A DNA stretch of 64,000 bases, from positions 85,836 to 149,835 of the forward strand of contig NIVC01002686.1 in the NCBI GenBank assembly GCA_002269645.1, given 5' to 3'. The notes below the pieces were generated by a model. It was given only the letters and a program-made list of their open reading frames with translations, was not told where the DNA came from and made no database searches. Shown here one piece after another: positions 6,440 to 64,000 of this stretch. This DNA is from Macrostomum lignano. Taxonomy: Eukaryota. The translations under genes and the position numbers were made by a program. Each line of letters opens with the position of its first letter. Position 1 is the stretch's first letter.

Positions 6440-6811
6440 ACTTTTGACACTTTGACATTTAATATTTCTGCTATGCCTAGTTTCTTTAAACTTTACTATG
6501 CTTATTTTCTTTAAATTTTACTATGTCTATTGTCTTTAAAACCTTACTATGCCTATTTTTCTTTGATATGCCTACTTTTGTGGACAATTAACAGTCTATT
6601 TCTATTGTGTGTTGCTCACCTATGCACTGCATTTCGTTCTTTAGCACCCAAAGCACCTATATTGACTATCTGATTTAGCAGTTGTACTATGTTTTATGTT
6701 TTCTTTAATAGCATTTGTACTAAATATGTTTTATTTTCAGCTTCCAATTTTTATGTTAAATGTACTCATAAATTTTTCACTGTAGCATTGCTTTCATTCA
6801 AAATTCATGAT

Positions 6812-6824
6812 AAGAGGAGGAAAG
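6812..6824 (+). other. Polypurine tract
   Basis: AAGAGGAGGAAAG followed 1 nt later by TGTAG. Confidence 0.75.
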
Positions 6825-6825
6825 T

Positions 6826-7415: not shown

Positions 7416-7418
7416 ACT

Positions 7419-7437
7419 TGGTGGCAGCTTGTAGGAT
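7419..7437 (+). other. PBS-like sequence, tRNA-Leu type
   Basis: TGGTGGCAGC...GTAGGAT resembles the complement of the 3' end of eukaryotic tRNA-Leu (...CGCTGCCACCA). Confidence 0.55.
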
Positions 7438-20242: not shown

Positions 20243-21950
20243 TTGTCAGCAAAGACACTCACGGACAGGTCAGCAAAGACACACAAGGACAGGTCAGCAA
20301 AGACACACAAGGACAGGTCAGCAAAGACACACAAGGACAGGTCAGCCATGACACACAAGGACAGGCCAGCAAAGACACACAAGGACAGGTCAGCAAAAAC
20401 ACATGGACAGGTCAGCCATGACACACAAGGACAGGTCAGCAAAAACACAAGGACAGGTCAGCAAAGACACACAAGGATAGGTCAGCAAAAACACATGGAC
20501 AGGTCAGCAAAGACACACAAAGACAGGTCAGCAAAAACACAAGGACAGGTCAGCAAAGACACACAAGGACAGGTCAGCAAAGACACACAAGGACAGGTCA
20601 GCAAAGACACACAAGGACAGGTCAGCCATGACACACAAGGACAGGCCAGCAAAGACACACAAGGACAGGTCAGCAAAAACACATGGACAGGTCAGCCATG
20701 ACACACAAGGACAGGTCAGCAAAAACACAAGGACAGGTCAGCAAAGACACACAAGGACAGGTCAGCAAAGACACACAAGGACAGGTCAGCAAAAACACAT
20801 GGACAGGTCAGCAAAGACACACAAAGACAGGTCAGCAAAAACACAAGGACAGGTCAGCAAAGACACACAAGGACAGGTCAGCAAAAACACATGGACAGGT
20901 CAGCCATGACACACAAGGACAGGTCAGCAAAGACACACAAAGACAGGTCAGCAAAAACACAAGGACAGGTCAGCAAAGACACACAAGGACAGGTCAGCAA
21001 AAACACATGGACAGGTCAGAAAAGACACACAAGGACAGGTCAGCAAAAACACATGGACAGGTCAGCAAAGACACACAAGGACAAGTCAGCAAAAACACAA
21101 GGACAGGTCAGCAATGACACACAAGGACAGGTCAGAAATGACACACAAGGACAGGTCAGCAAAAACACAAGGACAGGTCAGCAAAGACACACAAGGACAG
21201 GTCAGCAAAAACACATGGACAGGTCAGCAAAGACACACAAGGACAGGTCAGCAAAGACACACAAGGACAGGTCAGCAAAGACACACAAGGACAGGTCAGC
21301 AGACACTCAAGGACAGGTCAGCAAAGACACCCAAGGACAGGTCAGCAAAGACACACAAGGACAGGTCAGCAAAAACACATGGACAGGTCAGCAAAGACAC
21401 ACAAGGACAGGTCAGCAAGTCACACAAGGACAGGTCAGCAGACACTCAAGGACAGGTCAGCAAAGACACCCAAGGACAGGTCAGCAAAAACACATGGACA
21501 GGTCAGCAAAGACACACAAGGACAGGTCAGAAAAGACACACAAGGACAGGTCAGCAAAGACACCCAAGGACAGGTCAGCAAAGACACACAAGGACAGGTC
21601 AGCAAAAACACAAGGACAGGTCAGCAAAGACACACAAGGACAGGTCAGCAAAGACACCCAAGGACAGGTCAGCAAAAACACAAGGACAGGTCAGCAAAAA
21701 CACAAGGACAGGTCAGCAAAGACACACAAGGACAGGTCAGCAAAAACACAAGGACAGGTCAGCAAAGACACACAAAGACAGGTCAGCAAAAACACAAGGA
21801 CAGGTCAGCAAAGACACACAAGGACAGGTCAGCAAAAACACATGGACAGGTCAGAAAAGACACACAAGGACAGGTCAGCAAAAACACATGGACAGGTCAG
21901 CAAAGACACACAAAGACAGGTCAGCCAAGGCATAAAGACACTATGACAGG
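20243..21950 (+). repeat. 24-bp (some 22-bp) minisatellite; inverted partner at 24175-26000
   Basis: acacaaggacaggtcagcaaagac, ~70 copies. Confidence 0.95.
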
Positions 21951-22659
21951 TCTATTATTCTATGAACCTATTCTAATTCTATGAACTTTCTATACGGGTT
22001 TTATCCCCGTTATTCGCTATCTATATCCCTAAAGCCAAGGGTACATTGCGGTCAATTTATTATTCTATTATATTATCCTTAAGTCTAATAGTTAGTAATC
22101 TATCTTGTAGATCAATTATATATATATCGTTCGAAATGTAGCATTTGTAGCTGGGCCCAATACTTTCCTTTTATAATTTTTTATTATTTGAAATCTTCAA
22201 TTAAAAGCAAAGGAAGGTGATTTGGCTCAGGCCATTAGGCATATCCGCGCGTATGTCTGTCCTGTGCAGGAATTCATAGGCTTTCATTCATATTCGCTTA
22301 ATTATTATTGCTAATAGCTTTTATTGTTATTATGATTTCTTTTCTGTCGCTGCCGGGTCCACTAGCTTCTATACTCAGTTGACAGTCTTAATTAGCAATA
22401 TGTTATACAATACTTACTATAATAGACTCTGGCAACGTTTACTACTCTACAAGATCAATATGTGCTTCTAATTTGTAGAAAAATACATACAACACATAAC
22501 CCGTTGATTCTATTATTCAGGTTGTTAACTGAACTTTCAGATTTTATTTTTCTAGCTGATAGTCCAGAATGCTTAATTGGTTAGTCTATTAACTAGTAAT
22601 TATAGTAATTATTGTGCTTCTTGGTCTACGACAATTGACTGCCGGCCCTAGACCCAAAT

Positions 22660-22950
22660 TACCGTAACCTAAACTCTAACCCTCTCCTAAGCCCTACCGT
22701 AACCTAAAATCTAACGCTCTCCTAAACCCTACCGTAACATAAACTCATAAACCCTACCCTAATCTAAACTCTAACCCTCGATCACATGAACCCTTCTTTA
22801 ACCTAAACTCTAACCCCCACTTAAGCCCTAACGTAACGTAAACCCTAGTTTAAACCCTAAACCCTACCATGATCTAAACCCTAACCCTCACTTAAAGCCT
22901 ACCCTATCCTAACCTAAACCCTAACCCTCATTTAACCCTACCATAACCTA
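22660..22950. repeat. Degenerate (TAACCC)/(TAAACCC)-like tract
   Basis: Repeated ccctaaccct/aaaccctaaaccct motifs. Confidence 0.65.
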
Positions 22951-23164
22951 AATCGTTGGCAGCTAATTCTATGTTTCATGTTCCTTACGCTTTTACGTTG
23001 TAAAATTTCGATTTTGTGAACCGAGTTGATTTCAAATACTACTTGATTTACACCGTTTTAAGTAGTTTAAGTAGAATATCGAATTCCAAATCTAGGCCGC
23101 TTATTTTTCTGTCCTAAAATGATTGATGCATTGCAGTAGCAAGAAAAGCGTCAACCAATAGCAG

Positions 23165-26100
23165 ATGGCTTTCGCCTCGGCCAATCAGAAGTCGCCTGGC
23201 TACAGCCAGCCAGCCAATAGCGGCGAGGCAGTTTCGCCGATACGCGCCCTAGCCAATAAAGGCGAGAATGCCAGCTGCGCAGAGTGCGGCGCCAGGCCAA
23301 CTAGCGTAGTCGGCCTGGAGACTGGCGGCACCTTCGCTTGCGTAGCCTGCGCCGCCGTCTACAGGTGACCTTCGTGAGCGGGTGTCCACTGGAATCTAAT
23401 AACAAGATCTGGGTGTCCACTGGTATCTAATGACAAGATCTGGGTGTCCGCTGGTATCTAATGACAAGATCTGGGTGTCCACTGGTATCTAATGACAAGA
23501 TCTGGGTGTCCACTGGTATCTAATGACAAGATCTGGGTGTCCACTGGTATCTAATGACAAGATCTGGGTGTCCGCTGGTATCTAATGACAAGATCTGGGT
23601 GTCCACTGGTATCTAATGACAAGATCTGGGTGTCCACTAGAATAGCCAATAGCAATACTCGGTCTAAAAGGGGAATTAGACTGGGTTCCCCAATTTAAAA
23701 TCCCTAAACAATGTCCGCACAATTCCACAGGCGGCTAGGATTCCGCACCAGATCGGTTGACCGGGACTCCTGGCAGCCGGCCGAGCTGGCTAGCCTTCTG
23801 GGCAATCTGGCGGTGGCCCAGGAGCTCGAGCGCAACCTGCCGGCCTTTTATCGCCGGCCGAAACCGCACGCAGTCGGTGAGGCTGACGCCATCCGGCACC
23901 AGTTCGTGCTGGCCAAGTACAGGCGCAGGGAGTTCTGTGACCCCGCACTGCAGGCCGCCTACCATCGGATGGGCGGCGGCGGCGGCTTCACCAAGGAGGG
24001 CCAACTGTGGAAACGGTCGAAAGATTCGGACAAGTACTTTTCCAGAATTTTTGAACTGTCCGAGAGGGATAATTATCTGCGGTACTTTGTGAAGGACGGC
24101 AGCGCTAGGGAGGTCAAGGCCACCATTCCCATTGATAGGGTGAGTTGGGCCACTGTGGGATGGGCTTTGTTGGTCCGTGTGTCATTGCTGACCTGTCCTT
24201 GTGTGTCATTGCCGACCTGTCCTTGTGTGTCTTTGCCGACCTGTCCTTGTGTGTCTTTGCTGACCTGTCCTTGTGTGTCTTTGCTGACCTGTCCTTGTGT
24301 GTCTTTGCTGACCTGTCCTTGTGTGTCTTTGCTGACCTGTCCTTGTGTGTCATTGCCGACCTGTCCTTCAGTGTCTGCTGACCTGTCCTTGTGTGTCATT
24401 GCCGACCTGTCCTTCAGTGTCTGCTGACCTGTCCTTGTGTGTCATTGCCGACCTGTCCTTGTGTGTCTTTGCCGACCTGTCCTTCAGTGTCTGCTGACCT
24501 GTCCTTGTGTGTCTTTGCTGACCTGTCCTTGTGTGTCATTGCTGACCTGTCCATGTGTTTTTGCTGACCTGTCTTTGTGTGTCATTGCCGACCTGTCCTT
24601 GTGTGTCATTGCCGACCTGTCCTTGTGTGTCTTTGCCGACCTGTCCTTCAGTGTCTGCTGACCTGTCCTTGTGTGTCTTTGCTGACCTGTCCTTGTGTGT
24701 CATTGCTGACCTGTCCATGTGTTTTTGCTGACCTGTCCTTGTGTGTCTTTGCTGACCTGTCCTTGTGTGTCTTTGCTGACCTGTCCTTGTGTGTCATTGC
24801 TGACCTGTCCTTGTGTGTCTTTGCCGACCTGTCCTTGTGTGTCATTGCCGACCTGTCCTTGTGTGTCATTGCCGACCTGTCCTTGTGTGTCATTGCTGAC
24901 CTGTCCATGTGTTTTTGCTGACCTGTCCTTGTGTGTCATTGCCGACCTGTCCTTGTGTGTCATTGCCGACCTGTCCTTGTGTGTCATTGCCGACCTGTCC
25001 TTGTGTGTCTTTGCTGACCTGTCCTTGTGTGTCATTGCTGACCTGTCCTTGTGTGTCATTGCCGACCTGTCCTTGTGTGTCATTGCCGACCTGTCCTTGT
25101 GTGTCATTGCCGACCTGTCCTTGTGTGTCATTGCCGACCTGTCCTTGTGTGTCTTTGCCGACCTGTCCTTCAGTGTCTGCTGACCTGTCCTTGTGTGTCT
25201 TTGCTGACCTGTCCTTGTGTGTCATTGCTGACCTGTCCATGTGTTTTTGCTGACCTGTCCTTGTGTGTCATTGCCGACCTGTCCTTGTGTGTCTTTGCTG
25301 ACCTGTCCTTGTGTGTCTTTGCTGACCTGTCCTAGTGTGTCATTGCTGACCTGTCCTTGTGTGTCATTGCCGACCTGTCCTTGTGTGTCATTGCCGACCT
25401 GTCCTTGTGTGTCTTTGCTGACCTGTCCTTGTGTGTCTTTGCTGACCTGTCCTTGTGTGTCATTGCTGACCTGTCCTTGTGTGTCATTGCCGACCTGTCC
25501 TTGTGTGTCATTGCCGACCTGTCCTTGTGTGTCATTGCCGACCTGTCCTTGTGTGTCATTGCCGACCTGTCCTTCAGTGTCTGCTGACCTGTCCTTGTGT
25601 GTCTTTGCTGACCTGTCCTTGTGTGTCTTTGCTGACCTGTCCTAGTGTGTCATTGCTGACCTGTCCTTGTGTGTCTTTGCTGACCTGTCCATGTGTTTTT
25701 GCTGACCTGTCCTTGTGTGTCTTTGCTGACCTGTCCTTCAGTGTCTGCTGACCTGTCCTTGTGTGTCTTTGCTGACCTGTCCTTCAGTGTCTGCTGACCT
25801 GTCCTCGTGTGTCTTTGCTGACCTGTCCATGTGTTTTTGCTGACCTGTCCTTGTGTGTCTTTGCTAACCTGTCCTTCAGTGTCTGCTGACCTGTCCTTGT
25901 GTGTCTTTGCTGACCTGTCCTTCAGTGTCTGCTGACCTGTCCTTGAGTGTCTTTGCTGACCTGTCCTTCAGTGTCTGCTGACCTGTCCTCGTGTGTCTTG
26001 ACTGCCTGTCTTCAAATAATCCTTCGTGTCCTTGATCACCTGTCCGTGATTTCATGGCGTATTTGTGGGCCCCTCTGTGTTTTGCACACCAGCGGCACAG

Positions 26101-34889: not shown

Positions 34890-36548
34890 CACTGAGTCAG
34901 ATATTGCCTGACAATTATCTACCACTGACGGTCAGATATTGCTGACAATTATCTGACGGTCAGATATTGCCTGACAATTAGCTACCACTGACGGTCAGAT
35001 ATTGCTGACAATTATCTACCACTGACAGTCAGACATTGCTGACAATTAGCTACCACTGACGGTCAGATATTGCTGACAATTATCTGACGGTCAGATATTG
35101 CCTGACAATTAGCTACCACTGACGGTCAGATATTGCTGACAATTATCTACCACTGACAGTCAGACATTGCTGACAATTAGCTACCACTGACGGTCAGATA
35201 TTGCTGACAATTATCTGACGGTCAGATATTGCCTGACAATTAGCTACCACTGACGGTCAGATATTGCTGACAATTATCTGACGGTCAGATATTGCCTGAC
35301 AATTAGCTACCACTGACGGTCAGATATTGCTGACAATTATCTGACGGTCAGATATTGCCTGACAATTAGCTACCACTGACGGTCAGATATTGCTGACAAT
35401 TATCTGACGGTCAGATATTGCCTGACAATTAGCTACCACTGACAGTCAGACATTGATGACAATTAGCTACCCCTGACAGTCAGACATTGCTGACAATTAG
35501 CTACCACTGACAGTCAGACATTGCTGACAATTAGCTACCACTGACGGTCAGATATTGCTGACAATTATCTGACGGTCAGATATTGCCTGACAATTAGCTA
35601 CCACTGACGGTCAGATATTGCTGACAATTATCTGACGGTCAGATATTGCCTGACAATTAGCTACCACTGACGGTCAGATATTGCTGACAATTATCTGACG
35701 GTCAGATATTGCCTGACAATTAGCTACCACTGACGGTCAGATATTGCTGACAATTATCTGACGGTCAGATATTGCCTGACAATTAGCTACCACTGACGGT
35801 CAGATATTGCTGACAATTATCTGACGGTCAGATATTGCCTGACAATTAGCTACCACTGACAGTCAGACATTGATGACAATTAGCTACCCCTGACAGTCAG
35901 ACATTGCTGACAATTAGCTACCACTGACAGTCAGACATTGATGACAATTAGCTACCCCTGACAGTCAGACATTGCTGACAATTAGCTACCACTGACAGTC
36001 AGACATTGATGACAATTAGCTACCCCTGACAGTCAGACATTGCTGACAATTAGCTACCACTGACGGTCAGACATTGCCTGACAATTAGCTACCACTGACA
36101 GTCAGACATTGCTGACAATTAGCTTAATTAAATAGATATCCCTACAATTTAATTGACATAAACAGCTAAACATGACTGAAGTGATGGTGCTATTATAGAA
36201 AGTAAACTTCACTTACGCCAAACTGCATGGATTTCAATGAGCAGGACGATTAGCAAAATTTCAAATGCCATAAACAAATGTATACAGTATTGGAAAATTA
36301 CTTAAGGCACACAAGCTGACTAGCTGGAGCAGGCTTTAACCACTTTTCAACTCGTGCTATTTTGACGACGACGACGACGACGACGAAGTCGATTTGTCGT
36401 TCGACCAATTATTTGACTGTCTGTCAGTGGTAGCTAATTGTCAGCAATGTCTGACTGTCAGGGGTAGCTAATTGTCATCAATGTCTGACTGTCAGGAGTA
36501 GCTAATTGTCATCAATGTCTGACTGTCAGTGGTAGCTAATTGTCAGCG
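34890..36548. repeat. 63-bp (35+28) higher-order minisatellite with an inverted copy at 36416-36548
   Basis: gtcagatattgcctgacaattagctaccactgacg + gtcagatattgctgacaattatctgacg; reverse-complement units follow a ~300-bp spacer. Confidence 0.9.
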
Positions 36549-46900: not shown

Positions 46901-49900
46901 GATAGTACTGGCGCTCGTCTCTGACCACCTGGCCGCGATGGTTGGTGGCAGGTATAGTGTGGATTCTTCAGGGTAGGGGTGGATTCTTCAGGGTAGGGGC
47001 GGATTCTTCAGGGTAGGTGTGGATTCTTCAGGATAGGGGTGGATTCTTCAGGGTAGGGGCGGATTCTTCGGGTAGGGGCGGATTCTTCAGGATAGGGGTG
47101 GATTCTTCAGGGTAGGGGCGGATTCTTCAGGGTAGGGGCGGATTCTTCGGGTAGGGGCGGATTCTTCGGGGTAGGGGCGGATTCTTCAGAATAGGGGTGG
47201 ATTCTTCAGGGTAGGGGTGGATTCTTCAGGGTAGGGGCGGATTCTTCAGGGTAGGTGTGGATTCTTCAGGATAGGGGTGGATTCTTCAGGGTAGGGGCGG
47301 ATTCTTCGGGGTAGGGGCGGATTCTTCAGGGTAGGGGCGGATTTTTCAGGATAGGGGTGGATTCTTCAGGGTAGGGGCGGATTCTTCGGGTAGGGGCGGA
47401 TTCTTCAGGATAGGGGTGGATTCTTCAGGGTAGGGGCGGATTCTTCAGGGTAGGGGCGGATTCTTCAGGGTAGGGGCGGATTCTTCGGGGTAGGGGCGGA
47501 TTTTTCAGGATAGGGGTGGATTCTTCAGGATAGGGGTGGATTCTTCAGAGTAGGGGCGGATTCTTCAGGGTAGGGGCGGATTCTTCAGGGTAGGGGCGGA
47601 TTCTTCAGGGTAGGGGCGGATTCTTCAGGGTAGGGGCGGATTCTTCGGGGTAGGGGCGGATTCTTCAGGGTAGGGGCGGATTTTTCAGGATAGGGGTGGA
47701 TTCTTCAGGGTAGGGGCGGATTCTTCGGGTAGGGGCGGATTCTTCAGGGTAGGGGCGGATTTTTCAGGATAGGGGTGGATTCTTCAGGGTAGGGGCGGAT
47801 TCTTCGGGGTAGGGGCGGATTCTTCAGGATAGGGGTGGATTCTTCAGGGTAGGGGCGGATTCTTCAGGGTAGGGGCGGATTCTTCAGGGTAGGGGCGGAT
47901 TCTTCGGGGTAGGGGCGGATTTTTCAGGATAGGGGTGGATTCTTCAGGATAGGGGTGGATTCTTCAGAGTAGGGGCGGATTCTTCAGGGTAGGGGCGGAT
48001 TCTTCAGGGTAGGGGCGGATTCTTCAGGGTAGGGGCGGATTCTTCAGGGTAGGGGCGGATTCTTCGGGTAGGGGCGGATTCTTCAGGGTAGGGGCGGATT
48101 TTTCAGGATAGGGGTGGATTCTTCAGGGTAGGGGCGGATTCTTCGGGGTAGGGGCGGATTCTTCAGGATAGGGGCGGATTCTTCAGGGTAGGGGCGGATT
48201 CTTCAGGGTAGGGGCGATCTTACAACTGTCGATCCCCTTATCACCTCCATCAGCGCCTGCCAGGTCTCCCGGCTGTGAAAACAAGGCTGGCAGAGGGCCC
48301 TGCAGGCGGCCATCTGGCTGGCAACGCATCTCTCGTAGCGCAGCAGTAGGTGCCACATTGGCTCGGGCTGCACAATTTCCACGTGTCGGATAAGCTGCAT
48401 CTCGGGATCGACTCGCAGCCACAGCAGCGAACAGTCCGACTCCAGTTTGCCCAGATCCGGATCTTCCAGTTCGTCTCCGTTGCTAAGCAACACTTTGCGA
48501 CGCTTAATTTTGCGACTTTTAGTGTGACAGGGCAGGTCGCTGACGGCTGCCGATTCGTCCAGCTTCAGCGTGTGCGTGAACGGCCCGTCCAGCTCCTGCA
48601 GGCTCACCGCCACCGCGCCCGTGTAGCGCCTGCGACGGCCGCCGCCGCCTCCGCCGCCACCAGATGCCGCAACTGGCGGGTCGTCGCGAATCTCCAGTGC
48701 GATGAGGTTGCGCTTCTTATTAATTGAGAAGCTGGCCCTGAGGCGAGCGTGGCCGGGCTGGGTGACCCACTGGTCCAGCAGGTACTGCATGTTCTTGCCG
48801 GTGAGGGCCAGGATCAGGTCTAGCAGCGCCTGGCTGGATAGCAGGAAGGCCGGCCGCCAGCTCTGCTCTGTGCCGGGCTGCAGCGGCTGCTGCTGCAAAC
48901 TGGGATCGTATGAGCTGGCCAGGGTGATCAGCTTGTTGAGTACGTACTGCAGTACCTGAGGGTTGGGGGGATGGGCAGGTTTTGTACATTTTGATATATT
49001 CTGAGCGACAATTCAGCGATCTCAGCGACAATCTGAGCCGCAATCTCAGTAATAACTCCAGCAACAATCTAAGCGACAATTCTAGCGACAATCTCAGTGA
49101 CAATTCTAGCGACAATCTGAGCGACAATTCTAGCGACAATCTCAGTGACAATTCTAGCGACAATCTGAACGACAATTCTAGCGACAATCTGAGCGACAAT
49201 TCTAGCGACAATCTGAGCGACAATTCTAGCGACAATCTCATGGACAATTTGAGCAAAAATCTGAGCGACAATCTCAATTTATATAAGCGACAATCTGAGC
49301 GACAATCCCAATTTATATGAGCGACAATCTGAGCGACAATCTCATCGAAAATCTGAGTGACAATCTCATCGATAATCTGAACGACAATCTCATCGACAAT
49401 CTGAGCGACAATCTCACTGAAAATCTGAGCGACAATCTCATCGATAATCTAAGCGACAATCTCACTGACAATCTGAGCGACAATCTCATCGATAATCTGA
49501 GCGACAATCTAATCGAAAAGCTCAGCCACAATCTGAGCGACAATCTCATCGATAATCTGAGCGACAATCTAATCGAAAAGCTCAGCGACAATCTGAGCGA
49601 CAATCTCATCGATAATCTGAGCGACAATCTAATCGAAAAGCTCAGCCACAATCTGAGCGACAATCTCATCGATAATCTGAGCGACAATCTAATCGAAAAG
49701 CTCAGCGACAATCTGAGCGACAATCTCATCGATAATCTGAGCGACAATCTAATCGAAAAGCTCAGCGACAATCTGAGCGACAATCTCATCGATAATCTGA
49801 GCGACAATCTAATCGAAAAGCTCAGCGACAATCTGATCGAGCGACAATCTCATCGATAATCTGAGCGACAATCTAATCGAAAAGCTCAGCGACAATCTGA

Positions 49901-53864: not shown

Positions 53865-54205
53865 CAGTGCCAGGAACTGTGTCTATACAGTGGCTGTACA
53901 GTGTCTATGCAGTGTCTATGCAGTGTCTATACAGTGTCTATGCAGTGTCTATGCAGTGTCTATGCAGTGTCTATGCAGTGTCTATACAGTGTCTATGCAG
54001 TGTCTATGCAGTGTCTATGCAGTGTCTATGCAGTGTCTATGCAGTGTCTATACAGTGTCTATACAGTGTCTATACAGTGTCTATGCAGTGTCTATGCAGT
54101 GTCTATACAGTGTCTATGCAGTGTCTATGTAGTGTCTATGCAGTGTCTATACAGTGTCTATGCAGTGTCTATACAGTGTCTATGCAGTGTCTATGCAGTG
54201 TCGAT
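53865..54205. repeat. 11-bp minisatellite
   Basis: gcagtgtctat, ~30 copies. Confidence 0.95.
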
Positions 54206-54699
54206 ACAGGGTCTAAAAACAAATGAGAAAGCAAAGAAGTCAATACAACTGAATACAAACCATTTTCACTTTAATCCTGTTTAGTACTCATAAAAAGTTT
54301 TACACCAACAAACTGGATGGGTTGGTTACCAAAATGGCAAACAAACATAAAAGGATTATGTACGTCGTAGGTTAAAAGCGTAAAATTCAAATTATACGTA
54401 AAAAGCGAAACACAAAGCCCTAACAGAATAAGGCAAACAAGTTGAACAGATCCGATGGGAACAACGCAGACACAAAAATGTCAATTAATTAGTAATACTA
54501 AACACCTTTGAATGCTTTGAAAACAATCTATAGCTCGCAGATTGAATATTATTATTAACAAAAAGAGCATAACAGATGTCAACTTGAAATAAAAAATCAT
54601 AGCATGAACTTATGCTACTACTGCTGCGCATCATTTCTTTCGTATTTAAGTAGTATGAAATGCAAATACAAAGTAATGACTTCATTTATCCGATTATCA

Positions 54700-54968
54700 T
54701 CAGGCAGACAGGCTACCAAAGGACCACCAGGGAAACAGCAGGCAGACAGGCTACCAAAGGACCACCAGGGAAACAGCAGGCAGACAGGCTACCAAAGGAC
54801 CACCAGGGAAACAGCAGGCAGACAGGCTACCAAAGGACCACCAGGGAAACAGCAGGCAGACAGGCTACCAAAGGACCACCAGGGAAACAGCAGGCAGACA
54901 GGCTACCAAAGGACCACCAGGGAAACAGCAGGCAGACAGGCTACCAAAGGACCACCAGGGAAACAGCA
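54700..54968. repeat. 38-bp minisatellite, ~7 copies
   Basis: gcagacaggctaccaaaggaccaccagggaaacagcag. Confidence 0.95.
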
Positions 54969-54986
54969 GACATACAGCAGCACTCC

Positions 54987-57900
54987 CTAATTCCGCAGGT
55001 GGCCGGTGAGCGGGTCGAGGCCGCCCAGGCGGTACCGCTGATCCGCATACCGGGTGCTCCAGTCCGAACCAGAGCACGAATCAGTCAGGCCAACAATGCC
55101 CGGACAAGCGGCTGAAGAGGCGGCCGCACTGTCCGAGTGGCGGCAGACGGTCTCCAATCTGTAGCGCCTGGACAGCAGCCGGACAGCCAGCCGGATGTCC
55201 GGATTGGCCGCGGCGGATTCGGCCGGATTTCTATTAGCTAATCGAAGCTGAGCAATGGACGCGGCGGGTACGGCTTTGAACAGGGCCAGGTATTGTGGCG
55301 AATTAGGATCCGGCTTCACTAGCTGGTTGCTATGGGCATCGGAACCGGTTGGCAACAGGATGAACTCGGACTCAGCTACGGCGGATCCGACCGAAAGCGG
55401 CTGCTGTTCATCAAGAAGCAGCAGGCGCCAGACGCCGGGCTCCAGACTGCCGGGTGCCTGCAGATCGGTGCAGCCGACCTCCTTGGCTGTTGAATCCTCA
55501 GCCAGTAGCAGTTCCGGGACGCTGAGCTGGAAAGCCGATCGGATAGCGCCGTCCGGGTCCAGCAGCAGGAAGGTGGCCGTCACGGCCGGCCCCGGGCCCC
55601 AGGCGTAGCGCAGCTGCAGGCCGGAGTCGGCGGCCCGGCCGGCGGCCAGCAGGGACAAGCGGTCCCGGAAGAGGTCCTCTTTCCAATCATATTGGCGGCC
55701 AACCTGTCGAATAAGAATCATGCGAGACTCAAGAAAAGTTTTGAAGGCCAATTTTCCCTCAAAAGAACTAAAACTACAATAGATTACGAATGTGAATAGA
55801 GGCCAAGATATTGTGGTCTATGCAAACTTAAGACAGGTGTTTCGAAGGCCGATCATAGATGCTCAACAGTTCAATTAAGCGCATTTAGAATGGTTAGCAA
55901 CCATTTTGCACCAGGAACAATAAGTCTTAAAGATTCCCTGCATGGTCTGCATCAATAAACAGAGAAGTTTATTGTGAGCATTCCCCCAAGCTTTACAGCA
56001 AAAACTATTTTGGTCTCTGGTTGAGAACTTGCTCCAACTAAAGAATGCCTTTCAAGTAGCTGGTCACTCACTATACTCATACGGTCTATTAAAACGCACA
56101 ATTTATCCCGTTGAAAACGTCACCGAGACAAGAATCGCTAAAGAGTGATTGCAAACAACTCACTCAGTGACTCTAGCGACTCTTGGGGCGACTCTTGTGA
56201 CTTTTTAACGACTCAAACGACTGCAATGCGACGGAGAGGCGACTGTTGAATCACGAGCGCATCGCGTGATTTGCAGAGTCGTAATTAAAGAGTCGCGAAA
56301 GAAGTCGTTCAAGAGCCGTTGTGTTGGCGCTTAACTTTCTACTAACATAAGTAGACTAAATAGAGTTGTGTTATAAATGCGAAATGCGATTCTAATTCAT
56401 TAAGTGACGCAGATGTGCTTTAGACGCAACTCAGTGATTCTGCAGCGGCTCTGGCACGCCTCAGATACGCCTCTACGGCCCCAGGGTCATTATAGAGGCC
56501 CCCCAGAGTTGTTATATAGTTTCAGACAATACAACGCCTCAAAATGAGACTTTTAGGCGACACTTTGACAAGTTTTTGGCAATTTGTAACAGTGAACTCC
56601 CGTTTTAGAGTCATCTTGAGTCTCTTCTAACGACTCTGCGGTGACGCAAGTGACTCTGGGACGCTTCTTGACCTAGGAAGCATTTTCATCGGGCATTCGC
56701 TGCAATTCACCTCGAACTCCATAAACCTGGCGGCAATCACAGACTGGTAGGCCGACGTCAAAGATGACGCGTTGCCATGCGGTTGCTGCTTGGGGTGGAC
56801 AATCCGGACAGCTTGGCCGGACCCGATGCCAGACCGCAGGCTGAAGTGCGCGTCTAGCAGCATCGCCGCGTTGGTGCCGCCGCCGCCGCCGACACCGCCG
56901 CCAATCGAGGCGGTCAGCAAGGGACCCTGAAACGCGTCCTCCAGGTAGAACTCGGTCACTTCAACAGCGCGCACACTGTCGGGATCGAAGCCAGCCGGAC
57001 ACGTGCCGGACAGCAGTTCGGCGCAAAGCAGCCGAGTCAACAGTCGGCCAAAGGCGCTCTGCACCGGCGTCAGGCCTGGCGCCCCAGCTGTGAACGCGCT
57101 GAGCCAGTAGCGCGGCCGGCCGAGCTTGGCGCGCATTTCCCGGCCAGCGGCTCCACCGTGCCGCTGCTTCATCAATTCGGCGTAGGCGGCATCGACAGCC
57201 GACACGCTGATTGTTGGGTCGAATTTTCTGGCAAAGAAAGCGCCGTGACCACCGCTGCCGCTGCTGCTGGCGTAGGCGGCAGCCTCGGCGCCCCGGTAGA
57301 CCATGGGACTGCAGCCGCACCAGTCAGCCACCGGCAGGTGCTGGCACCGGCAGCCGCGCTTCCGGTCCCAATTAACCAAGCGGAGGTTGGCGTTGGCAAC
57401 CCGGCCGCATAGCTCAGTGTTCTGGGCGATGGTGTGGAACACAGACTCCACTGCGGGTTTGGATTGGTTGGGCCGTGCTGCTGTACTGCTGGAACTTGAG
57501 GATCTTGATCCCAAATCCAAGGATTTTGGTTATGAAATACAGGCCCTTAGGGATCGCAGAATGGGATTTCGATTTGAAGATACCGGGACATGGGATCTCG
57601 ACTACTCATATACATGTGAGGGTTTCGGTTCTAAAATCCCTGGAATTGGGATCTCAAACTGGGTGAGGATTTTAGCTCTAAAATCCCTGGATTTGGGATC
57701 TCAAACTGGGAGGGGATTTCGGCTCTAAAATCCCTGGATTTGGGATCTCAAACTGATTGGGGATTTCGGCACTAAAATCCCGGATTTGGGATCTCAAACT
57801 AAGTGAGGATTTTTCAGTTAAAAAATTCTAGGATTTGGGATTTCGATCCCTAACTTTAGAATTTTTCTGTCCTGAAACACAGGTACTTAGGGATATTTAC

Positions 57901-60217
57901 CCCTATAAGTTGGGGCCTTTAAAGGATCAGAGGATTTATCCCAGCAACTTCAGAATACTATAAATACAAAACATCGCACAAAGAGATTGATAACAGAAAC
58001 AGTTTTACAAACCTGGTAGCAGGCCGTATTTAAAATACTCCACAATATTGGTCACAATAGTGTGGTTATTATCCAGTCCGCTGATAACAAACTGTACAAA
58101 TTCTCTATTTAACGTCAGCCAATCAGAGCCGCCGTCGAACAGCAGGCCTTCTATTGGCTGCCGGCTGCCCAGAAAGTACATATGATTGTCGCACTGTACA
58201 AAGTAGCGCTCAATAGCTTGCTTGCGCATGAAATCGCTGTAGTTTCCTGAGTGCGAGGCCAAGAAGCTGAGATGCCTCATCTCGGTCAGGTAGGCGGTCA
58301 ACTGCCGATCCGGCCTAATAGGGAAATCCGACTCGCTCAGGTTGATTACGAAATCCCAGTGCCAATCGGTGCAGTTGAGCAGGTCGCGAAATGCTGCCAG
58401 CATCAGATCCAGGAGGCCTGTGCCGCCCCAGATGGTGGGGAAGCGGCGGCGCATTAGGCGCACGTTTGGGAATCTGGCAGCGGAGGCAGATTGAGGCGGG
58501 AGCGCGATTAATGTACCTAATGAGCTAATGGGAGCTAGATGAAGGTACCTAATGAGCCAATGAGAGCTAGATTAGTGTACCTAACTAGCTAATGGGGGTC
58601 ATTTCAGCTAGATTAGTGTACTTAACTAGCTAATGGGGGTCATTTCAGCTAGATTAGTGTACTTAACTAGCTAATGGGGTCATTTCAGCTAGATTAGTGT
58701 ACCTAACTAGCTAATGGGGGTCATTTCAGCTAGATTAGTGTACTTAACTAGCTAATGGGGTCATTTCAGCTAGATTAGTGTACCTAACTAGCTAATGGGG
58801 GTCATTTCAGCTAGATTAGTGTACCTAACTAGCTAATGGGGGTCATTTCAGCTAGATTAGTGTACTTAACTAGCTAATGGGGTCATTTCAGCTAGATTAG
58901 TGTACCTAACTAGCTAATGGGGTCATTTCAGCTAGATTAGTGTACCTAACTAGCTAATGGGGTCATTTCAGCTAGATTAGTGTACCTAACTAGCCAATGG
59001 GGTCATTTCAGCTAGATTAGTGTACCTAACTAGCTAATGGGGTCATTTCAGCTAGATTAGTGTGCCTAACTAGCTAATGGGGTCATTTCAGCTAGATTAG
59101 TGTACCTAACTAGCCAATGGGGTCATTTCAGCTAGATTAGTGTACCTAACTAGCTAATGGGGTCATTTCAGCTAGATTAGTGTACCTAACTAGCTAATGG
59201 GGTCATTTCAGCTAGATTAGTGTACCTAACTAGCCAATGGGGTCATGGGAGCTCGTAAATTAATGTACCTAATGAGCTACTGGGGTAGGTAGGTTCCGAT
59301 GATACCTTATTACCTACCTACCTAGAACCCTAAGATCAATCAAATAGTTCTCACCTGGCTTCCAGCGGCATCAGCGACTCGTACAGGAAATCGTCTCTAG
59401 AGTCCACATGTATATAGTAATAATGATTAACATAGTACACAGCCGATAACAGCCGCATTACCTGTCGCACACCCCTACCGCTGAGCGTCATCAGGTAGAC
59501 TAATCGAACTCGATCGTTCTCCCAGCTATAGGATTCGAACTCGGGACCGTAGGCAGGTGCGGTATGAGACACAAACAAAGAGCTAGCATTGAGCCCGGTT
59601 TGGCTAACCAGATAGTAACCATCTCTAATCGAAGCACCTGTGCAATTATAGCCAATAGCAGGTCGGCTGCAACCGTTGCCTAGCAACTGAAGACAGACGC
59701 AGTCCCGGTTGCTAATGCTAGCCAGCCGATAGCCGGCCGAGCGACATCTGGCCAAGCATTCGCCTCGCCGGCTCTCTGCCGGCATATTGTTCGTCCAACT
59801 GGCCGACGGAATCACTTCGCGCGGATACGGACAACTGTCCGACTGTAGCAGGCTGTGACAGGAAGTGGCCGGGCCAGAGCCGGACAGTAGTCTAGCCGGA
59901 CAGGCCTGTCCGACATGCCGCAGCCGGTATGGCAGCCGGCCAGACTCGAAGGCGCAAGCGACGCGCAGCAGCCGACGCCGGCACTCGGGCTGAGCTGCCC
60001 TGTCAACGGCATAGCGCGCCCGCTCGGAGCGGAGCCTGCAGCCATCGTCTGGCGACTCCGGTCCATCCGGCAGGCGCTCCCATTCGGCCAGCGGCTGTCC
60101 GGCGGCTCTGTCCGAATTAAATAACCAGTTTAAATGGCCGAGTAAGCAGAGACAGACGACAGACGCTAGTGCTGCTACTAATAGTAGGCCAAGATGCCTG
60201 CGTTTTGAGCCGCTCAT
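54987..60217 (-). CDS. XYLT: Xylosyltransferase (peptide O-xylosyltransferase, oxt/XYLT), ~926 aa, 4 exons
   Basis: Exons 60217-59355, 58473-58013, 57450-56711, 55703-54987; N-terminal TM anchor, WSC-like Cys motif, YYIHVDSR, TIWGG, WDFVINLSESDFP, DGGSDW, ESVFHT, NWDRKRGCRCQ..DWCGCSP, ARKFD. Confidence 0.95.
57540..57850. repeat. Degenerate 47-bp repeat, XYLT intron 2
   Basis: ctaaaatccc recurring at 57631, 57678, 57725. Confidence 0.8.
58505..59260. repeat. 40/41-bp minisatellite, XYLT intron 1
   Basis: gtcatttcagctagattagtgtacctaactagctaatgg(g)g. Confidence 0.95.
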
Positions 60218-60344
60218 AGTTCAAGCAGCGAGCAGGCATTAAATTAGATCATTGAGCGTGCCATGAGATGCAGCAAATGAATCTGAGACTGTTTATTGAT
60301 TGTTAGAGATATTATAACAATTTGATGAGTTCATAGAAGGCTAG

Positions 60345-61205
60345 GAGCGATTCTTGACGATCTAGGGGCGATTCTTGACGATCTAGGGGCGATTCTTGAT
60401 GATCTAGGGGCGATCCCTGACGACCTAGGGGCGATTCTCGGTGATTTAAGGGCGATTCTTGATGATCTAGGGGCGATTCTTGACGATCTAGGGGCGATTC
60501 TTGATGATCTAGGGGCGATCCCTGACGACCTAGGGGCGATTCTCGGTGATTTAAGGGCGATTCTTGATGACCTAGGGGCGATTCTTGATGATCTAGGGGC
60601 GATCCCTGACGACCTAGGGGCGATTCTCGGTGATTTAAGGGCGATTCTTGATGACCTAGGGGCGATTCTTGATGATCTAGGGGCGATTCTTGACGACCTA
60701 GGGGCGATACTTGATGATCTAGGGGCGATTCCTGACGACCTAGGGGCGATTCTCGGTGATTTAAGGGCGATTCTTGATGACCTAGGGGCGATTCTTGATG
60801 ATCTAGGGGCGATTCTTGACGACCTAGGGGCGATACTTGATGATCTAGGGGCGATTCCTGACGACCTAGGGGCGATTCTCGGTGATTTAAGGGCGATTCT
60901 TGATGATTTAGGGGCGATTCCTGACGACCTAGGGGCGATTCTCGGTTATTTAAGGGCGATTCTTGATGACCTAGGGGTGATTCTTGATGATTTAGGGGCG
61001 ATTTTTGAGGATCTAAGGGCGATTTTTTATTTAGGAGCGATTCTTGATGATTTAAGGGCGATTCTTGAGGATCTAAGGGCGATTTTTTACTTAGGAGCGA
61101 TTCTTGAGGATCTAGGGGCGATTCTCGATGATTTAAGGGCGATTATCAATGATTTAGAGGCGATTCTAGGTGATTTAGGGGCGATTTTATCATTTAGAGG
61201 TGATT
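60345..61205. repeat. 21-bp minisatellite upstream of XYLT
   Basis: ggggcgattcttga(t/c)gatcta. Confidence 0.95.
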
Positions 61206-61760
61206 ATTAACATAGATTAACCGATTTTTGAGCGATCAGTGGCGATTCCAGCGGAGGTCAGAGGCAATTTTCATAGGGATCAGGGGCGATTTTTAATGGG
61301 GTTAATCTTGCGATTCTAGACTAAAGATAACTCGAATTCTAAAAGTCCTAACTGAATTACTAGCAAAGGGGTAATTAATAAACATTTGAGTCTATCTTGT
61401 TCTATTTTTATAGCTGCGTAGTTGAGATAAAAGTACAAATTACACAATCTGCTGACTCAAAACTTAATTACAGTTAAAAAATTTATTTAACACATTTAGG
61501 ATTAAGATAAGCACTGGAAGATGCAATGATGCGGCAATAAAGTTACACTATCCGAAAAAGGAATTTAATTCGGCGCACGAGAACACGGTATGTTATAAGA
61601 AAGACATAAGCACAGAAGCATGCGTGCGAGCAGTTGATAAATGAAAATTAGGCATAAACTATTGAATTATTAGTTAACAGAACTAATTGGCTATCTCATG
61701 CATCTGAGGTAGACAAAGCTTGAGCTCATCTGCCATCACATTTTTCCAAGAGTTTGAATT

Positions 61761-62213
61761 CAGCTGAAATGACCCCCATTAGCTAGTTAGGTACACTAAT
61801 CTAGCTGAAATGACCCCCATTAGCTAGTTAGGTACACTAATCTAGCTGAAATGACCCCATTAGCTAGTTAGGTACACTAATCTAGCTGAAATGACCCCCA
61901 TTAGCTAGTTAGGTATACTAATCTAGCTGAAATGACCCCCATTAGCTAGTTAGGTAAACTAATCTAGCTGAAATGACCCCCATTAGCTAGTTAGGTACAC
62001 TAATCAAACTGAAATGACCCCCATTAGCTAGTTACATGTAGGTACACTAATCTAGCTGAAATGACCTCCATTAGCTAGTTAAGTACACTAATCTATCTCC
62101 CATTGGCTCATTAGGTACCTTCATCTAGCTCCCATTAGCTCATTAGGTACATTAATCGCGCTCCCGCCTCAATCTGCCTCCGCTGCCAGATTCCCAAACG
62201 TGCGCCTAATGCG
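61761..62213 (+). repeat. Inverted duplication of the XYLT intron 1 3' end plus 24 nt of exon 2
   Basis: 62101-62213 is the exact reverse complement of 58450-58562 (unique sequence); the rest is ~8 diverged 40/41-bp units. Confidence 0.95.
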
Positions 62214-62244
62214 TATTACAAAGATGATTGACAGCTTATTTAAA

Positions 62245-62715
62245 CCCTTCACAATCTACTCAACAATCTTACCTGCAATCTACTCAACAATCTTCGCTAC
62301 AATCTACTCAACAATATCCCTACAATCTACTCAACAATATCCCTACAATCTACTCAACAATCTCCCTACAATCTACTCAACAATCTCCGTACAATCTATT
62401 CAACAATCTACCTGCAATCTACTCAACAATCTACCTGCAATCTACTCAACAATCTCCGTACAATCTATTCAACAATCTCCGTACAATCTACTCAACAATC
62501 TCCGTACAATCTACTCAACAATCTCCGTACAATCTATTCAACAATCTCTACAATCTACTCAACAATCTTACCTGCAATCTACTCAACAATCTCCGTACAA
62601 TCTATTCAACAATCTCCGTACAATCTACTCAACAATCTCCGTACAATCTACTCAACAATCTCCGTACAATCTATTCAACAATCTCTACAATCTACTCAAC
62701 AATATTTTTACAATC
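62245..62715. repeat. ~23-bp minisatellite
   Basis: caatctactcaacaatctccgta. Confidence 0.92.
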
Positions 62716-62824
62716 TACTTAAGGAAATATTAAGGAAAATACTGGCCATACCACTGATCCTTAGCTATGTAGTAGAGAGCAGCAAGAGGTAAACATCGCA
62801 TATAAATTAATTAATCAACCTCTA

Positions 62825-63578
62825 TCATTCATCAGACGCCGGTTGCGCCAGCTGCCAGTCGCCAGAGTCGGCCACCTCGGGCAGTACAACCGGGAGAATC
62901 TGCAGACTGGCGTCGGCATCCAGCCTGGCCTGCAGATAGTGCAGCAGATCGGCAGGCTGTCCTGAACCAATGAGGCTGGGCTCGGCCATTTTGGAATCCA
63001 GATTATGATACTCATTGTTCGGGCCGCAGCGCCGGAGCGCCACCCAATGGCGGGAGCGGATTATCGGCAGCACGGAGCAGGCAGCCGATTGGTAATTGAT
63101 TAGGAAGCCTTCGATTCTGTCGGGCAGCAGGCAGGCGACGGTTTGCGCCGGTCGAACCAGACTAGGCGAAGGCCGCGGCTCTGCAAGGCGGCGTCCAACA
63201 CGTTAGCGTCGTAGTTGCCAAGGCCGAGGGGATTCCGATGAGGATTTAGCAGCCAGGTCTGTCGGGAGAGATAGCGGGCCCGGCGACGGGTGTACTTTTA
63301 ATAATGATATTATATTAAAGGATATTGAATGAGCATAGGTTAGTGACCCATGTAGGCATAGATAGGTATCTAAGCAGTGCACACGGTAACCTGAGTCAGT
63401 AAGGGCGATAAGCAAGCTAATAACCTGACCTGTTGCGGCGACAAAGACTGGCACAGCTGGTCAAACTGGCTCTGAGTGAACTCTGGCCGTTGCAGAAGAT
63501 TATTAGCGCGTGCACCGCGCATAATAATAGTCGCTGGCGCTCGTGATAGGGCGCCGCCTGCTGGGCGTGCGAATTCAT
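62825..63578 (-). CDS. JOSD: Josephin-domain deubiquitinase (JOSD1/2-like), 2 exons, with two apparent 1-bp deletions
   Basis: Exons 63578-63430 and 63258-62825; PYHERQRLLLCAVHAL[NN], GLGNYDANV, VWFDRRK, RHWVALR, NLDSK, so the catalytic Cys/His/Asp are present; frame breaks at ~63503 and ~63141. Confidence 0.88.
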
Positions 63579-63702
63579 TGCGCTATCTACGGCTGCAGCT
63601 GAAGCTGTTAGAGGGCGGCTTGCAGGCTAATGCTTTCTGCTTGACCTGGAAAAGCAACAGCTGATGTAAGTGATTGAAAATCTAGCGTAGCTCGAACATG
63701 TC

Positions 63703-63795
<93 letters not shown>

Positions 63796-63839
63796 TAGGT
63801 AGTAGTAGTAGTAGTAGTTAGTAGTAGTAGGTAGTAGTT

Positions 63840-63926
<87 letters not shown>

Positions 63927-64000
63927 TAGTAGTAGTAGTAGTAGTAGTATAGTAGTAGTAGTAGTAGTTAGTAGTGTAGTAGTAGTAGTAGTAGTAGTAG
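63703..64000. repeat. (AGT)n microsatellite running off the window end
   Basis: ~100 copies with occasional 1-bp irregularities. Confidence 0.97.

What the first reader, a model, noticed from the sequence alone, without database searches (positions are those of the whole stretch)
58450..62213. Inverted duplicate of the XYLT intron-1 acceptor, with 24 nt of exon 2, placed upstream of the gene
Seen: 61761-62213 is the reverse complement of ~58450-58900, covering the repeat units, branch and pyrimidine region, the AG and ATTCCCAAACGTGCGCCTAATGCG. The unique part is identical and the repeat part slightly diverged, which argues against a simple assembly echo. It sits between the JOSD stop and the XYLT ATG. 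Inference: in a JOSD-XYLT or long-outron pre-mRNA it would base-pair over and mask the 3' splice site and loop out exon 1 (the membrane anchor), acting as a built-in cis-antisense splice switch. It also supplies a ready plus-strand acceptor at 62189 ahead of a repeat-derived ORF. The architecture parallels the ADAP inverted pair.
Basis: partly seen in the sequence, partly recalled or inferred. Interest (0 to 1): 0.72.

Follow-up and report, generated by a model that had tools for sequence, protein, structure and literature searches.

The report
Inverted intron copy upstream of xylosyltransferase
About 450 bases from the end of the first intron of a flatworm xylosyltransferase gene, plus the first 24 bases of exon 2, have been copied backwards into the spacer in front of the gene; the copy is real and sits in all four assembled versions of the locus, but it looks like one of several local inverted duplications of minisatellites in this repeat-rich genome, and nothing shows it to be a splicing switch.

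Summary
Window 61762-62213 is the reverse complement of 58450-58893. The outer 113 nt are identical. The remaining ~340 nt, made of 40/41-nt minisatellite units, differ by ~13 substitutions and a few indels.

The window is the last 64 kb of Macrostomum lignano contig NIVC01002686.1. The gene is protein xylosyltransferase, and its annotated protein uses exactly this intron-1 acceptor. The 24 exon bases encode the conserved FPNVRLMR, so the copy went from the gene to the upstream spacer.

The copy lies at the same site, with the same junctions, in all four contigs of the assembly that carry this locus. It is therefore not an assembly echo.

The splice-switch reading could not be tested, because no RNA data can be reached. 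If both arms were on one RNA they would form ~437 bp of duplex over the acceptor. Read-through from JOSD is plausible by the published operon criterion.

Three things argue for a mutational by-product:
- The window holds two more inverted minisatellite pairs, which carry no splice-site sequence.
- The four contigs are too similar to show constraint.
- One contig shows apparent sequence exchange between the arms.

Most likely this is a template-switch inverted duplication with no dedicated function. Interest is modest.

The parts
58450..58473 (-). First 24 nt of XYLT exon 2 (A TTC CCA AAC GTG CGC CTA ATG CG, encoding R-FPNVRLMR). This is the source of the exon piece in the upstream copy.
   Evidence: The residues align with the conserved FPNVRLTR block of animal xylosyltransferases; N291 and R293 are invariant.
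58450..58893 (-). Source arm. It holds the exon-2 start, the AG (58475-58474), the pyrimidine-rich unique stretch, three degenerate 32-nt units (58500-58596) and about eight 40/41-nt minisatellite units at the 3' end of intron 1.
58474..59353 (-). XYLT intron 1 (880 nt). Most of it is the 40-nt quasi-palindromic minisatellite at 58565-59246.
   Evidence: Intron length varies among the contigs (880, 879, 1043, 1209 nt). The unit folds as a DNA hairpin, z = -6.0.
59354..60217 (-). XYLT exon 1. It carries the ATG, the type II membrane anchor, the WSC-like region and the start of the Branch (GT14) domain. It lies in the loop between the two arms.
60341..61186 (.). 21-nt minisatellite (about 40 units) in the spacer between the upstream arm and the ATG.
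61187..61761 (-). Unique AT-rich spacer. On the sense strand it holds ATTAAA at 61569, the first AATAAA after the JOSD stop at 61487, and TATAAA at 61412. It is identical in all four contigs.
61762..62213 (+). Upstream inverted copy (452 nt). On the plus strand it reads as eight minisatellite units, three degenerate units, the pyrimidine stretch, AG (62188-62189) and 24 nt of exon 2. On the gene's sense strand it is antisense to the intron-1 acceptor.
62214..62719 (.). 37-nt unique junction followed by a 23-nt minisatellite (62251-62719), lying between the copy and the JOSD stop. The array is G-poor on the plus strand, so it is open in all three frames.
62825..63073 (-). Last coding exon of the Josephin-domain gene (JOSD), with its stop at 62825-62827. 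It is on the same strand as XYLT.
20245..26012 (+). Parallel case. Inverted 24-nt minisatellite arrays at 20245-21940 and 24173-26012 flank ADAP exons 1-2 (ArfGap, 23165-24160). The left arm starts ~140 nt after the stop of a redoxin gene. The arms are pure repeat.
34895..36547 (.). Third inverted minisatellite pair (34-nt unit): 34895-36124 and 36414-36547, 290 nt apart.
   Evidence: The unit is hairpin-prone, z = -4.0.

Best explanation
This is a real local inverted segmental duplication, present in every assembled copy of the locus in the sequenced DV1 line of Macrostomum lignano. The last ~420 nt of XYLT intron 1 and the first 24 nt of exon 2 were copied in reverse orientation into the JOSD-XYLT spacer, 1.54 kb upstream of the XYLT ATG.

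The most likely origin (inferred) is a replication or repair template switch at a hairpin-prone, quasi-palindromic minisatellite. The exon piece and the splice site came along only because of where the breakpoints fell. The two arms have since stayed similar partly through occasional gene conversion between them.

The copy has no dedicated function. Its consequences are side effects. If it is ever on the same RNA as intron 1, it would form a long duplex over the 3' splice site. At the DNA level it is a substrate for recombination.

Shown here: the structure, the direction of copying, presence in all four contigs, two further inverted pairs in the window, and the pairing potential. Inferred: the template-switch origin and the lack of function.
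For: - Structure and boundaries are established.
- The direction is gene to spacer, because the 24 nt encode conserved catalytic-domain residues and the annotated protein uses this acceptor.
- The copy has the same site and the same junctions in four contigs. None of them has the loop inverted.
- Tandem arrays fill 40.6% of the window (38 arrays). Three of the four dispersed array duplicates are local inverted pairs, with 0.3-2.5 kb between the arms; the only direct one is a ~97-nt, ~80% match. The other two inverted pairs carry no splice-site sequence.
- The XYLT unit and the unit of the third pair are significantly hairpin-prone as single-stranded DNA (z = -6.0 and -4.0). Quasi-palindromes are known template-switch hotspots (abstracts of PMC7202029 and PMC7954356).
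- There is no target-site duplication, no homology beyond the arm ends, and no Rfam match.
- There is no sign of constraint. The upstream arm shows 1-3 differences among contigs, while 1,166 nt of flanking unique spacer show none. One change private to L003/L004 (G to T at 62096) weakens the pairing.
- In L002, two adjacent units of the upstream arm carry the CTAGCCAATGGGGTC haplotype, which is otherwise found only in the intron arrays. This indicates sequence exchange between the arms.
Against: - The outer 113 nt, which include the acceptor, are perfectly identical, while the repeat part has about 2% private changes. This hints weakly at preservation (P about 0.08).
- Two of the three inverted pairs have the same layout: upstream gene stop, arm, 5' exons, arm in intron. 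If that holds genome-wide it would call for an explanation beyond random mutation.
- The ADAP unit is not hairpin-prone (z = -0.5), so hairpins do not explain every pair.
- No empty site was available, so junction microhomology, the signature of template switching, could not be examined.
- The L002 'conversion' could be a short-read polishing artefact.
Confidence: 0.6

Rival explanations
1. Cis-acting RNA element. JOSD and XYLT are transcribed as one polycistronic or long-outron pre-mRNA. The upstream arm pairs with the end of intron 1 and the start of exon 2. This hides the 3' splice site and brings the exon-1 donor close to the upstream (spliced-leader) acceptor. Productive XYLT mRNA falls through intron retention, or through back-splicing of exon 1 into a circle.
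For: - The geometry is right: on the sense strand the upstream arm is antisense to the acceptor.
- In the minimum-energy fold of the 3.9-kb sense RNA, 437 base pairs join the arms, and every base from 58500 to 58450 is paired.
- FLCN, JOSD, XYLT and TAF2 lie on one strand.
- The repeat-adjusted spacer is ~0.9 kb, under the 1-kb operon threshold. In this species 30-39% of genes are trans-spliced and ~7% of transcription units are polycistronic (PMC8629364; PMC5730564).
- Inverted repeats of only 30-40 nt flanking an exon are enough to drive circularisation in other animals (abstract of PMC4201285).
Against: - No transcript evidence of any kind could be obtained.
- Spliced-leader addition and JOSD 3'-end cleavage would normally cut the arm away before intron 1 is transcribed, which lies more than 1.7 kb further on.
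- A TATAAA at 61412 lies below the arm and could mark a separate XYLT start.
- The other inverted pairs in the window have no splice-site content.
- There is no detectable constraint on the arm.
- Loss of exon 1 removes the start codon and part of the catalytic domain, so this would only waste transcripts.
Confidence: 0.12
2. Trans-acting antisense. The arm is part of a long JOSD 3' UTR, so JOSD mRNA carries 452 nt complementary to XYLT pre-mRNA. This couples the two neighbours through duplex formation, editing or small-RNA production.
For: On the sense strand there is no canonical AATAAA between the JOSD stop (62825) and 61487. The first ATTAAA and AATAAA (61569, 61487) lie just below the arm.
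Against: - Non-canonical poly(A) signals were not assessed, and the AT-rich stretch right after the stop could serve as one.
- A 1.3-kb 3' UTR made mostly of minisatellites is speculative.
- There are no RNA or small-RNA data.
- The target is almost entirely intronic.
Confidence: 0.07
3. DNA-level element. The 450-bp arms act as recombination substrates that can invert the 2.9-kb cassette holding exon 1 and its upstream spacer, switching XYLT off in some cells or lineages.
For: - The arms are long and 93-97% identical.
- L002 shows apparent sequence exchange between the arms.
Against: - All four contigs have the cassette in the functional orientation.
- No recombinase gene or site is apparent.
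- An inversion would simply break the gene.
Confidence: 0.04
4. Assembly artefact, such as a palindromic long-read chimera or a misplaced repeat.
For: - In the window's own contig the arm lies only 1.8 kb from the contig end.
- The genome is very repetitive, and the assembly is redundant (PMC5730564).
Against: - The same insertion with the same two junctions is found in three other contigs, more than 7 kb from any end. Collinear unique sequence lies on both sides, and contig-specific variants lie inside the arm.
- The arm has private mutations, including a 6-nt insertion, that are absent from every intron unit.
Confidence: 0.03
5. The two arms are the ends of a foldback or MITE-type transposon, or two insertions of one dispersed repeat family.
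For: Foldback elements have long terminal inverted repeats built of tandem subrepeats (general knowledge).
Against: - One end lies inside a conserved coding exon, and the 'element' would contain host exon 1.
- There is no target-site duplication.
- No other copy of the unit is found in the 64-kb window or the other loci.
Confidence: 0.02

Closest known systems
Short-range replication or repair template-switch rearrangements (FoSTeS/MMBIR-type inverted insertions; quasi-palindrome-associated template switching)
   Same: A nearby segment is copied in inverted orientation a few hundred to a few thousand bases away. The source is a hairpin-prone repeat. There is no transposon signature. The same kind of event recurs within the region (abstracts of PMC7954356, PMC7202029 and PMC9199198).
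   Different: Described short-range events are mostly tens of bases, while this one is 452 nt. Junction microhomology could not be checked because no empty site was available.
Flanking intronic complementary sequences (for example inverted Alu pairs or the Drosophila laccase2 repeats) that promote exon circularisation
   Same: Reverse-complementary segments bracket an exon together with its donor. The arm length far exceeds the 30-40 nt reported as sufficient (abstracts of PMC4201285 and PMC4617980).
   Different: - The upstream arm is intergenic or in an outron, not in an intron.
- The bracketed exon is the first coding exon, so an upstream acceptor would have to be a spliced-leader site, and none has been mapped.
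- The downstream arm contains the next exon's acceptor itself.
- No circular RNA has been shown.
Editing-site complementary sequences of ADAR substrates (for example GluA2 Q/R)
   Same: A nearby non-coding segment is complementary to an exon-intron boundary, which would give an exon-containing duplex in the pre-mRNA (general knowledge).
   Different: Those sequences lie in the adjacent intron, are short and are conserved. Here only 24 exon bases are involved, the partner is more than 3 kb upstream and possibly not co-transcribed, and no editing is known.
Inverted duplication of a gene fragment as the birth of hairpin small-RNA loci (the plant MIR-gene origin model)
   Same: An inverted copy of part of a gene lies next to that gene and could give double-stranded RNA directed at the parent (general knowledge).
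   Different: Here the arms are 2.9 kb apart and consist almost entirely of intron and minisatellite. No small RNAs have been shown.
Foldback transposons
   Same: They have long inverted arms built of tandem subrepeats.
   Different: Here one arm ends in a conserved exon, there is no target-site duplication, a host exon lies inside, and there are no further copies.

Membership tests
Local inverted segmental duplication (template-switch type) | Two copies in opposite orientation within a few kb on one molecule, well above chance similarity | tested here: met
   Arms 58450-58893 and 61762-62213. The outer 113 nt are identical, and overall identity is ~93-97%.
Local inverted segmental duplication (template-switch type) | An identifiable source copy and direction of copying | tested here: met
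   The 24 nt belong to the conserved FPNVRL block of xylosyltransferases and are used in the annotated coding sequence. The upstream copy has no coding context.
Local inverted segmental duplication (template-switch type) | Real in the genome, not peculiar to one contig | tested here: met
   Four contigs of GCA_002269645.1 carry it with the same junctions.
Local inverted segmental duplication (template-switch type) | Microhomology at the junctions when compared with an empty site | not testable with these tools
   Every available copy of the locus carries the insertion. No other strain or species sequence could be reached.
Exon-flanking complementary sequences that drive back-splicing | Reverse-complementary segments on both sides of the exon | tested here: met
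   The arms bracket exon 1 and its donor. The fold pairs them.
Exon-flanking complementary sequences that drive back-splicing | Both segments lie in the same primary transcript | not testable with these tools
   No RNA data are available. The operon criterion makes it possible, and the TATAAA at 61412 makes it doubtful.
Exon-flanking complementary sequences that drive back-splicing | A back-splice junction or splicing change that depends on the repeats | not testable with these tools
   This needs RNA-seq or RT-PCR.
Foldback or MITE-type transposon | Target-site duplication flanking terminal inverted repeats | tested here: not met
   The flanks are ...GAAGCGGCGG and TATTACAAAG... for the whole structure. 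For the inserted arm they are ...TTTGAATTC and TATTACAAAG.... Neither pair shows a duplication.
Foldback or MITE-type transposon | A multicopy family | tested here: inconclusive
   No other copy exists in the window or the three other loci. The whole genome could not be searched.
Assembly artefact | Confined to one contig or to a contig end, with no independent variants | tested here: not met
   The copy is internal in L001, L002 and L004, and L001 and L002 each carry their own variants inside the arm.
Described RNA families (Rfam 15) | A match to a covariance model | tested here: not met
   No match up to E = 0.1 in 57500-63200.

The most novel reading that the evidence does not exclude
In a spliced-leader trans-splicing flatworm, an antisense copy of a gene's first-intron acceptor sits in the operon spacer or outron. 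It is co-transcribed with the gene and folds back over the 3' splice site. This diverts XYLT transcripts into intron-retained or exon-1 circular forms, or into small RNAs. The ADAP pair would be a second example, so such pairs would form a wider class in which minisatellite inverted pairs bracket 5' exons and tune the output of downstream operon genes.
Probability: 0.1. Interest if true: 0.6.

Novelty: new member of a known kind. Interest (0 to 1): 0.3.

Why it matters
As it stands, this is a clean, dated-by-context example of how a repeat-rich, recently duplicated genome makes local inverted duplications that happen to capture a splice site. It also warns that such structures need not have a function.

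It would matter more in two cases:
- If RNA data showed the arm on the same transcript as XYLT. Macrostomum lignano has working transgenesis (PMC5730564), so a natural 450-bp antisense copy of an acceptor would be a convenient test. It could show whether long-range pairing competes with spliced-leader trans-splicing and cis-splicing, or drives circular RNA from a first exon.
- If a genome-wide count showed that inverted minisatellite pairs bracket 5' exons more often than chance allows.

Tried and rejected
- Independent assemblies or RNA contigs: exact look-ups of the exon-1 ORF and of the plus-strand ORF that crosses the outer junction found nothing.
- Protein search with ADAP exons 1-2, to fetch the paralogous ADAP loci, gave one UniRef entry with no contig. 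The ADAP pair could therefore not be compared across contigs.
- Protein search with the 194-aa JOSD protein, looking for transcript-derived contigs that would show the 3' UTR, returned only distant homologues and no M. lignano record.
- Full-text search for the gene identifiers Mlig022546 and Mlig011848 gave no paper.
- The Rfam scan of the region gave no match.
- A constraint test across the four contigs had no power. Unique spacer DNA is 100% identical among them.
- A sensitive search for homology extending beyond either arm end found none. The only hits were the 21-nt array matching itself.
- Transposon reading: rejected (no target-site duplication, a host exon inside, single copy).
- Coding reading of ORF 62200-62733: rejected. 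The 23-nt unit lacks G on that strand, so every frame is open.
Full report
**What the window is.** The next best hits are animal xylosyltransferases at 34-46%. The 90% cluster holds six M. lignano entries. Fetching their contigs gave four loci from assembly GCA_002269645.1 (Mlig_3_7). The reverse complement of window 54001-64000 is 100% identical to L003 positions 1-10000. The window is therefore the last 64 kb of NIVC01002686.1, and L003 coordinate x equals 64001 minus the window coordinate. The order FLCN, JOSD, XYLT, TAF2, all on one strand, is shared by the loci.

**Gene structure.** On the minus strand the XYLT ATG is at 60217. Exon 1 ends at 59354 (CCAG|gtgaga). Intron 1 is 59353-58474. 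Exon 2 begins at 58473 with A TTC CCA AAC GTG.... Pfam places Branch-domain positions 52-184 in exon 2, a weak WSC match in exon 1, Xylo_C in the last exon, and Josephin in the ORF 62825-63073. The annotated protein P0122 reads ...SLMPLEAR|FPNVRLMRRRF... across this junction. The FPNVRL block aligns with the conserved FPNVRLTR of insect, mollusc, hemichordate, fish and nemertean enzymes. The 24 nt are thus ancestral coding sequence, and the copying went from the gene to the spacer.

**The observation.** The repeat finder gives arms 58450-58624 / 62039-62213 (175 nt, 97%) and a family of register-shifted matches between the minisatellites. A global alignment fixes the arms at 58450-58893 and 62213-61762. 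The outer 113 nt are identical. After that come ~13 substitutions, one 6-nt insertion (62036-62041) and four single-G length differences. Homology stops abruptly at both ends. There is no target-site duplication and no weaker similarity beyond the ends.

**Not an assembly echo.** The 24-mer occurs exactly once in each orientation in each of the four loci. The upstream copy has the same two junction sequences in all of them. In L001, L002 and L004 it lies more than 7 kb from the ends of the fetched loci, and collinear sequence runs on into JOSD and FLCN. L001 and L002 carry their own variants inside the arm.

The four contigs are very recent copies. They show zero differences in 1,166 nt of unique spacer and at most 2 differences (or a single 1-nt gap) in the 864-nt exon 1. 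This fits the redundancy described for the DV1 line, which has duplicated large chromosomes (PMC5730564; PMC8629364). So they prove that the structure is real and present in all four assembled copies in this line, but they give no power to test selection.

**The arms over time.** The intron array changes length between contigs (intron 1 is 880, 879, 1043 or 1209 nt), while the upstream arm stays at 452-453 nt. The upstream arm has about 7-8 private changes in ~340 nt of repeat, roughly 2.2%. At that rate about 2.5 changes are expected in the 113-nt outer part, and none is seen, giving P about 0.08. That is not significant, and the repeats clearly change faster than unique DNA: the arm shows 1-3 differences among contigs against none in the flanks.

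One change shared by L003 and L004 (G to T at 62096) reduces complementarity. In L002, two adjacent units of the upstream arm carry CTAGCCAATGGGGTC. That haplotype requires three changes and is otherwise found only in the intron arrays. This looks like a gene-conversion tract between the arms, although short-read polishing could mimic it.

**How common such structures are.** Thirty-eight tandem arrays cover 26.0 kb, or 40.6% of the window. A self-comparison finds three inverted array pairs: 20245-21940 / 24173-26012, 34895-36124 / 36414-36547, and the XYLT pair. It finds no dispersed direct pair apart from one weak 97-nt match.

A redoxin gene ends near 20106, the left arm follows, and then come ADAP exons 1-2 (ArfGap, 23165-24160). 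The right arm fills the next intron, and PH-domain exons follow. Its arm ends lie inside repeat units, with no unique, exon or splice-site sequence. The third pair is 290 nt apart, with no evident exon between the arms.

As single-stranded DNA, the XYLT unit (z = -6.0) and the third pair's unit (z = -4.0) fold far better than shuffles. The ADAP unit (z = -0.5) and the neighbouring 21-nt unit (z = -0.3) do not.

**Could the RNA mechanism work?** Folding the sense RNA from 62260 to 58400 (3,861 nt) gives 437 base pairs between the arms. Every position from 58500 through the AG to 58450 is paired with 62163-62213. Cofolding the arms gives -816 kcal/mol, against -146 and -136 for the arms alone. 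So masking would occur if both arms were on one RNA.

Whether they are on one RNA is unknown. In favour:
- JOSD and XYLT are on the same strand.
- The 2,607-nt spacer shrinks to 890-958 nt once arrays are subtracted, below the 1-kb repeat-adjusted threshold used to call operons in this species (PMC8629364).
- 38.8% of genes are trans-spliced, and ~7% of transcription units are polycistronic (PMC5730564).
- There is no AATAAA on the sense strand between the JOSD stop and 61487.

Against:
- A TATAAA at 61412 lies below the arm.
- Spliced-leader addition and 3'-end cleavage would normally separate the arm from XYLT before intron 1 is made.
- Exon 1 holds the start codon, the anchor and part of the catalytic domain, so any effect would only lower output.
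- No transcript-derived sequence could be retrieved.

**The plus-strand 'acceptor plus ORF'.** The AG is at 62188-62189, and the frame of the copied exon piece runs on for 177 codons. However, the 23-nt unit (ACAATCTACTCAACAATCTCCCT) has essentially no G on that strand, so it contains no stop codon in any frame. A second ORF of 164 codons in another frame shows the same thing. This is a by-product, not evidence of a gene.

**Verdict.** The best-supported explanation is a local inverted duplication, made by a template switch at a hairpin-prone minisatellite. It is one of several such events in this region, and its arms still exchange sequence occasionally. The splice-switch reading is physically possible and not excluded, but it has no positive evidence. 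The base rate of similar, splice-site-free pairs argues against design. The known parallels are short-range template-switch rearrangements (abstracts) and, for the possible RNA consequence, exon-flanking inverted repeats that promote circular RNA (abstracts).

Noticed in passing
whole window: Thirty-eight tandem arrays with units of 3-83 nt cover 26.0 kb (40.6%) of the window. Almost every intron and spacer holds one. Several units share a GGGGCGATTCT-like motif (44733-44952 and 60341-61186; compare 31415-32440 and 46961-48216), which hints at related origins.
   Followed up: partly
window 20245-21940 and 24173-26012: Inverted 24-nt minisatellite arrays of 1.7-1.8 kb bracket ADAP exons 1-2, and the left arm begins ~140 nt after a redoxin gene's stop. 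The layout matches the XYLT pair, but the arms are pure repeat. Whether inverted pairs bracket 5' exons more often than chance allows is untested.
   Followed up: partly
window 34895-36124 and 36414-36547 (also 33024-33120): A third inverted pair, with a 34-nt hairpin-prone unit, has arms only 290 nt apart. A weak direct copy of the same unit lies at 33024-33120.
   Followed up: partly
window 56105-56478; L001 1324-1694, L002 1175-1535, L004 464-836: A 373-nt non-tandem element in the XYLT intron between 55751 and 56627 has an inverted copy, 96-97% identical, in the FLCN gene region about 12-13 kb upstream, outside the window. It is probably a dispersed or MITE/SINE-like repeat.
   Followed up: no
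window about 63507 and 63139: The window's JOSD copy lacks one G in each of two GG runs compared with the other three contigs. This breaks the frame, so the annotated model here is 83 aa instead of 194 aa. The site is close to the contig end, so these may be consensus errors, not a real pseudogene.
   Followed up: partly
L004 9243-10105 (XYLT exon 1): A 1-nt gap in exon 1 of this contig explains the truncated 502-aa model P0123, which starts at an internal methionine.
   Followed up: no
L002 8027-8478: Two adjacent units of the upstream arm carry a three-change haplotype (CTAGCCAATGGGGTC) that is otherwise seen only in the intron arrays. This is either gene conversion between the inverted arms or a polishing artefact.
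   Followed up: partly
window 22660-22952: Degenerate telomere-like (CCCTAA-type) repeats lie inside the ADAP upstream region, between the two ADAP arms.
   Followed up: no
window 61769-62061 (sense strand): Each of the eight units of the upstream arm presents TCATTTCAG on the gene's sense strand. This matches the top spliced-leader acceptor motif [T/C]TNCAG reported for this species (PMC8629364), so cryptic trans-splice sites inside the arm are conceivable.
   Followed up: no
window 63703-64000: A (GTA)n microsatellite runs to the end of the window, which is also the end of contig NIVC01002686.1. It probably broke the assembly there.
   Followed up: no
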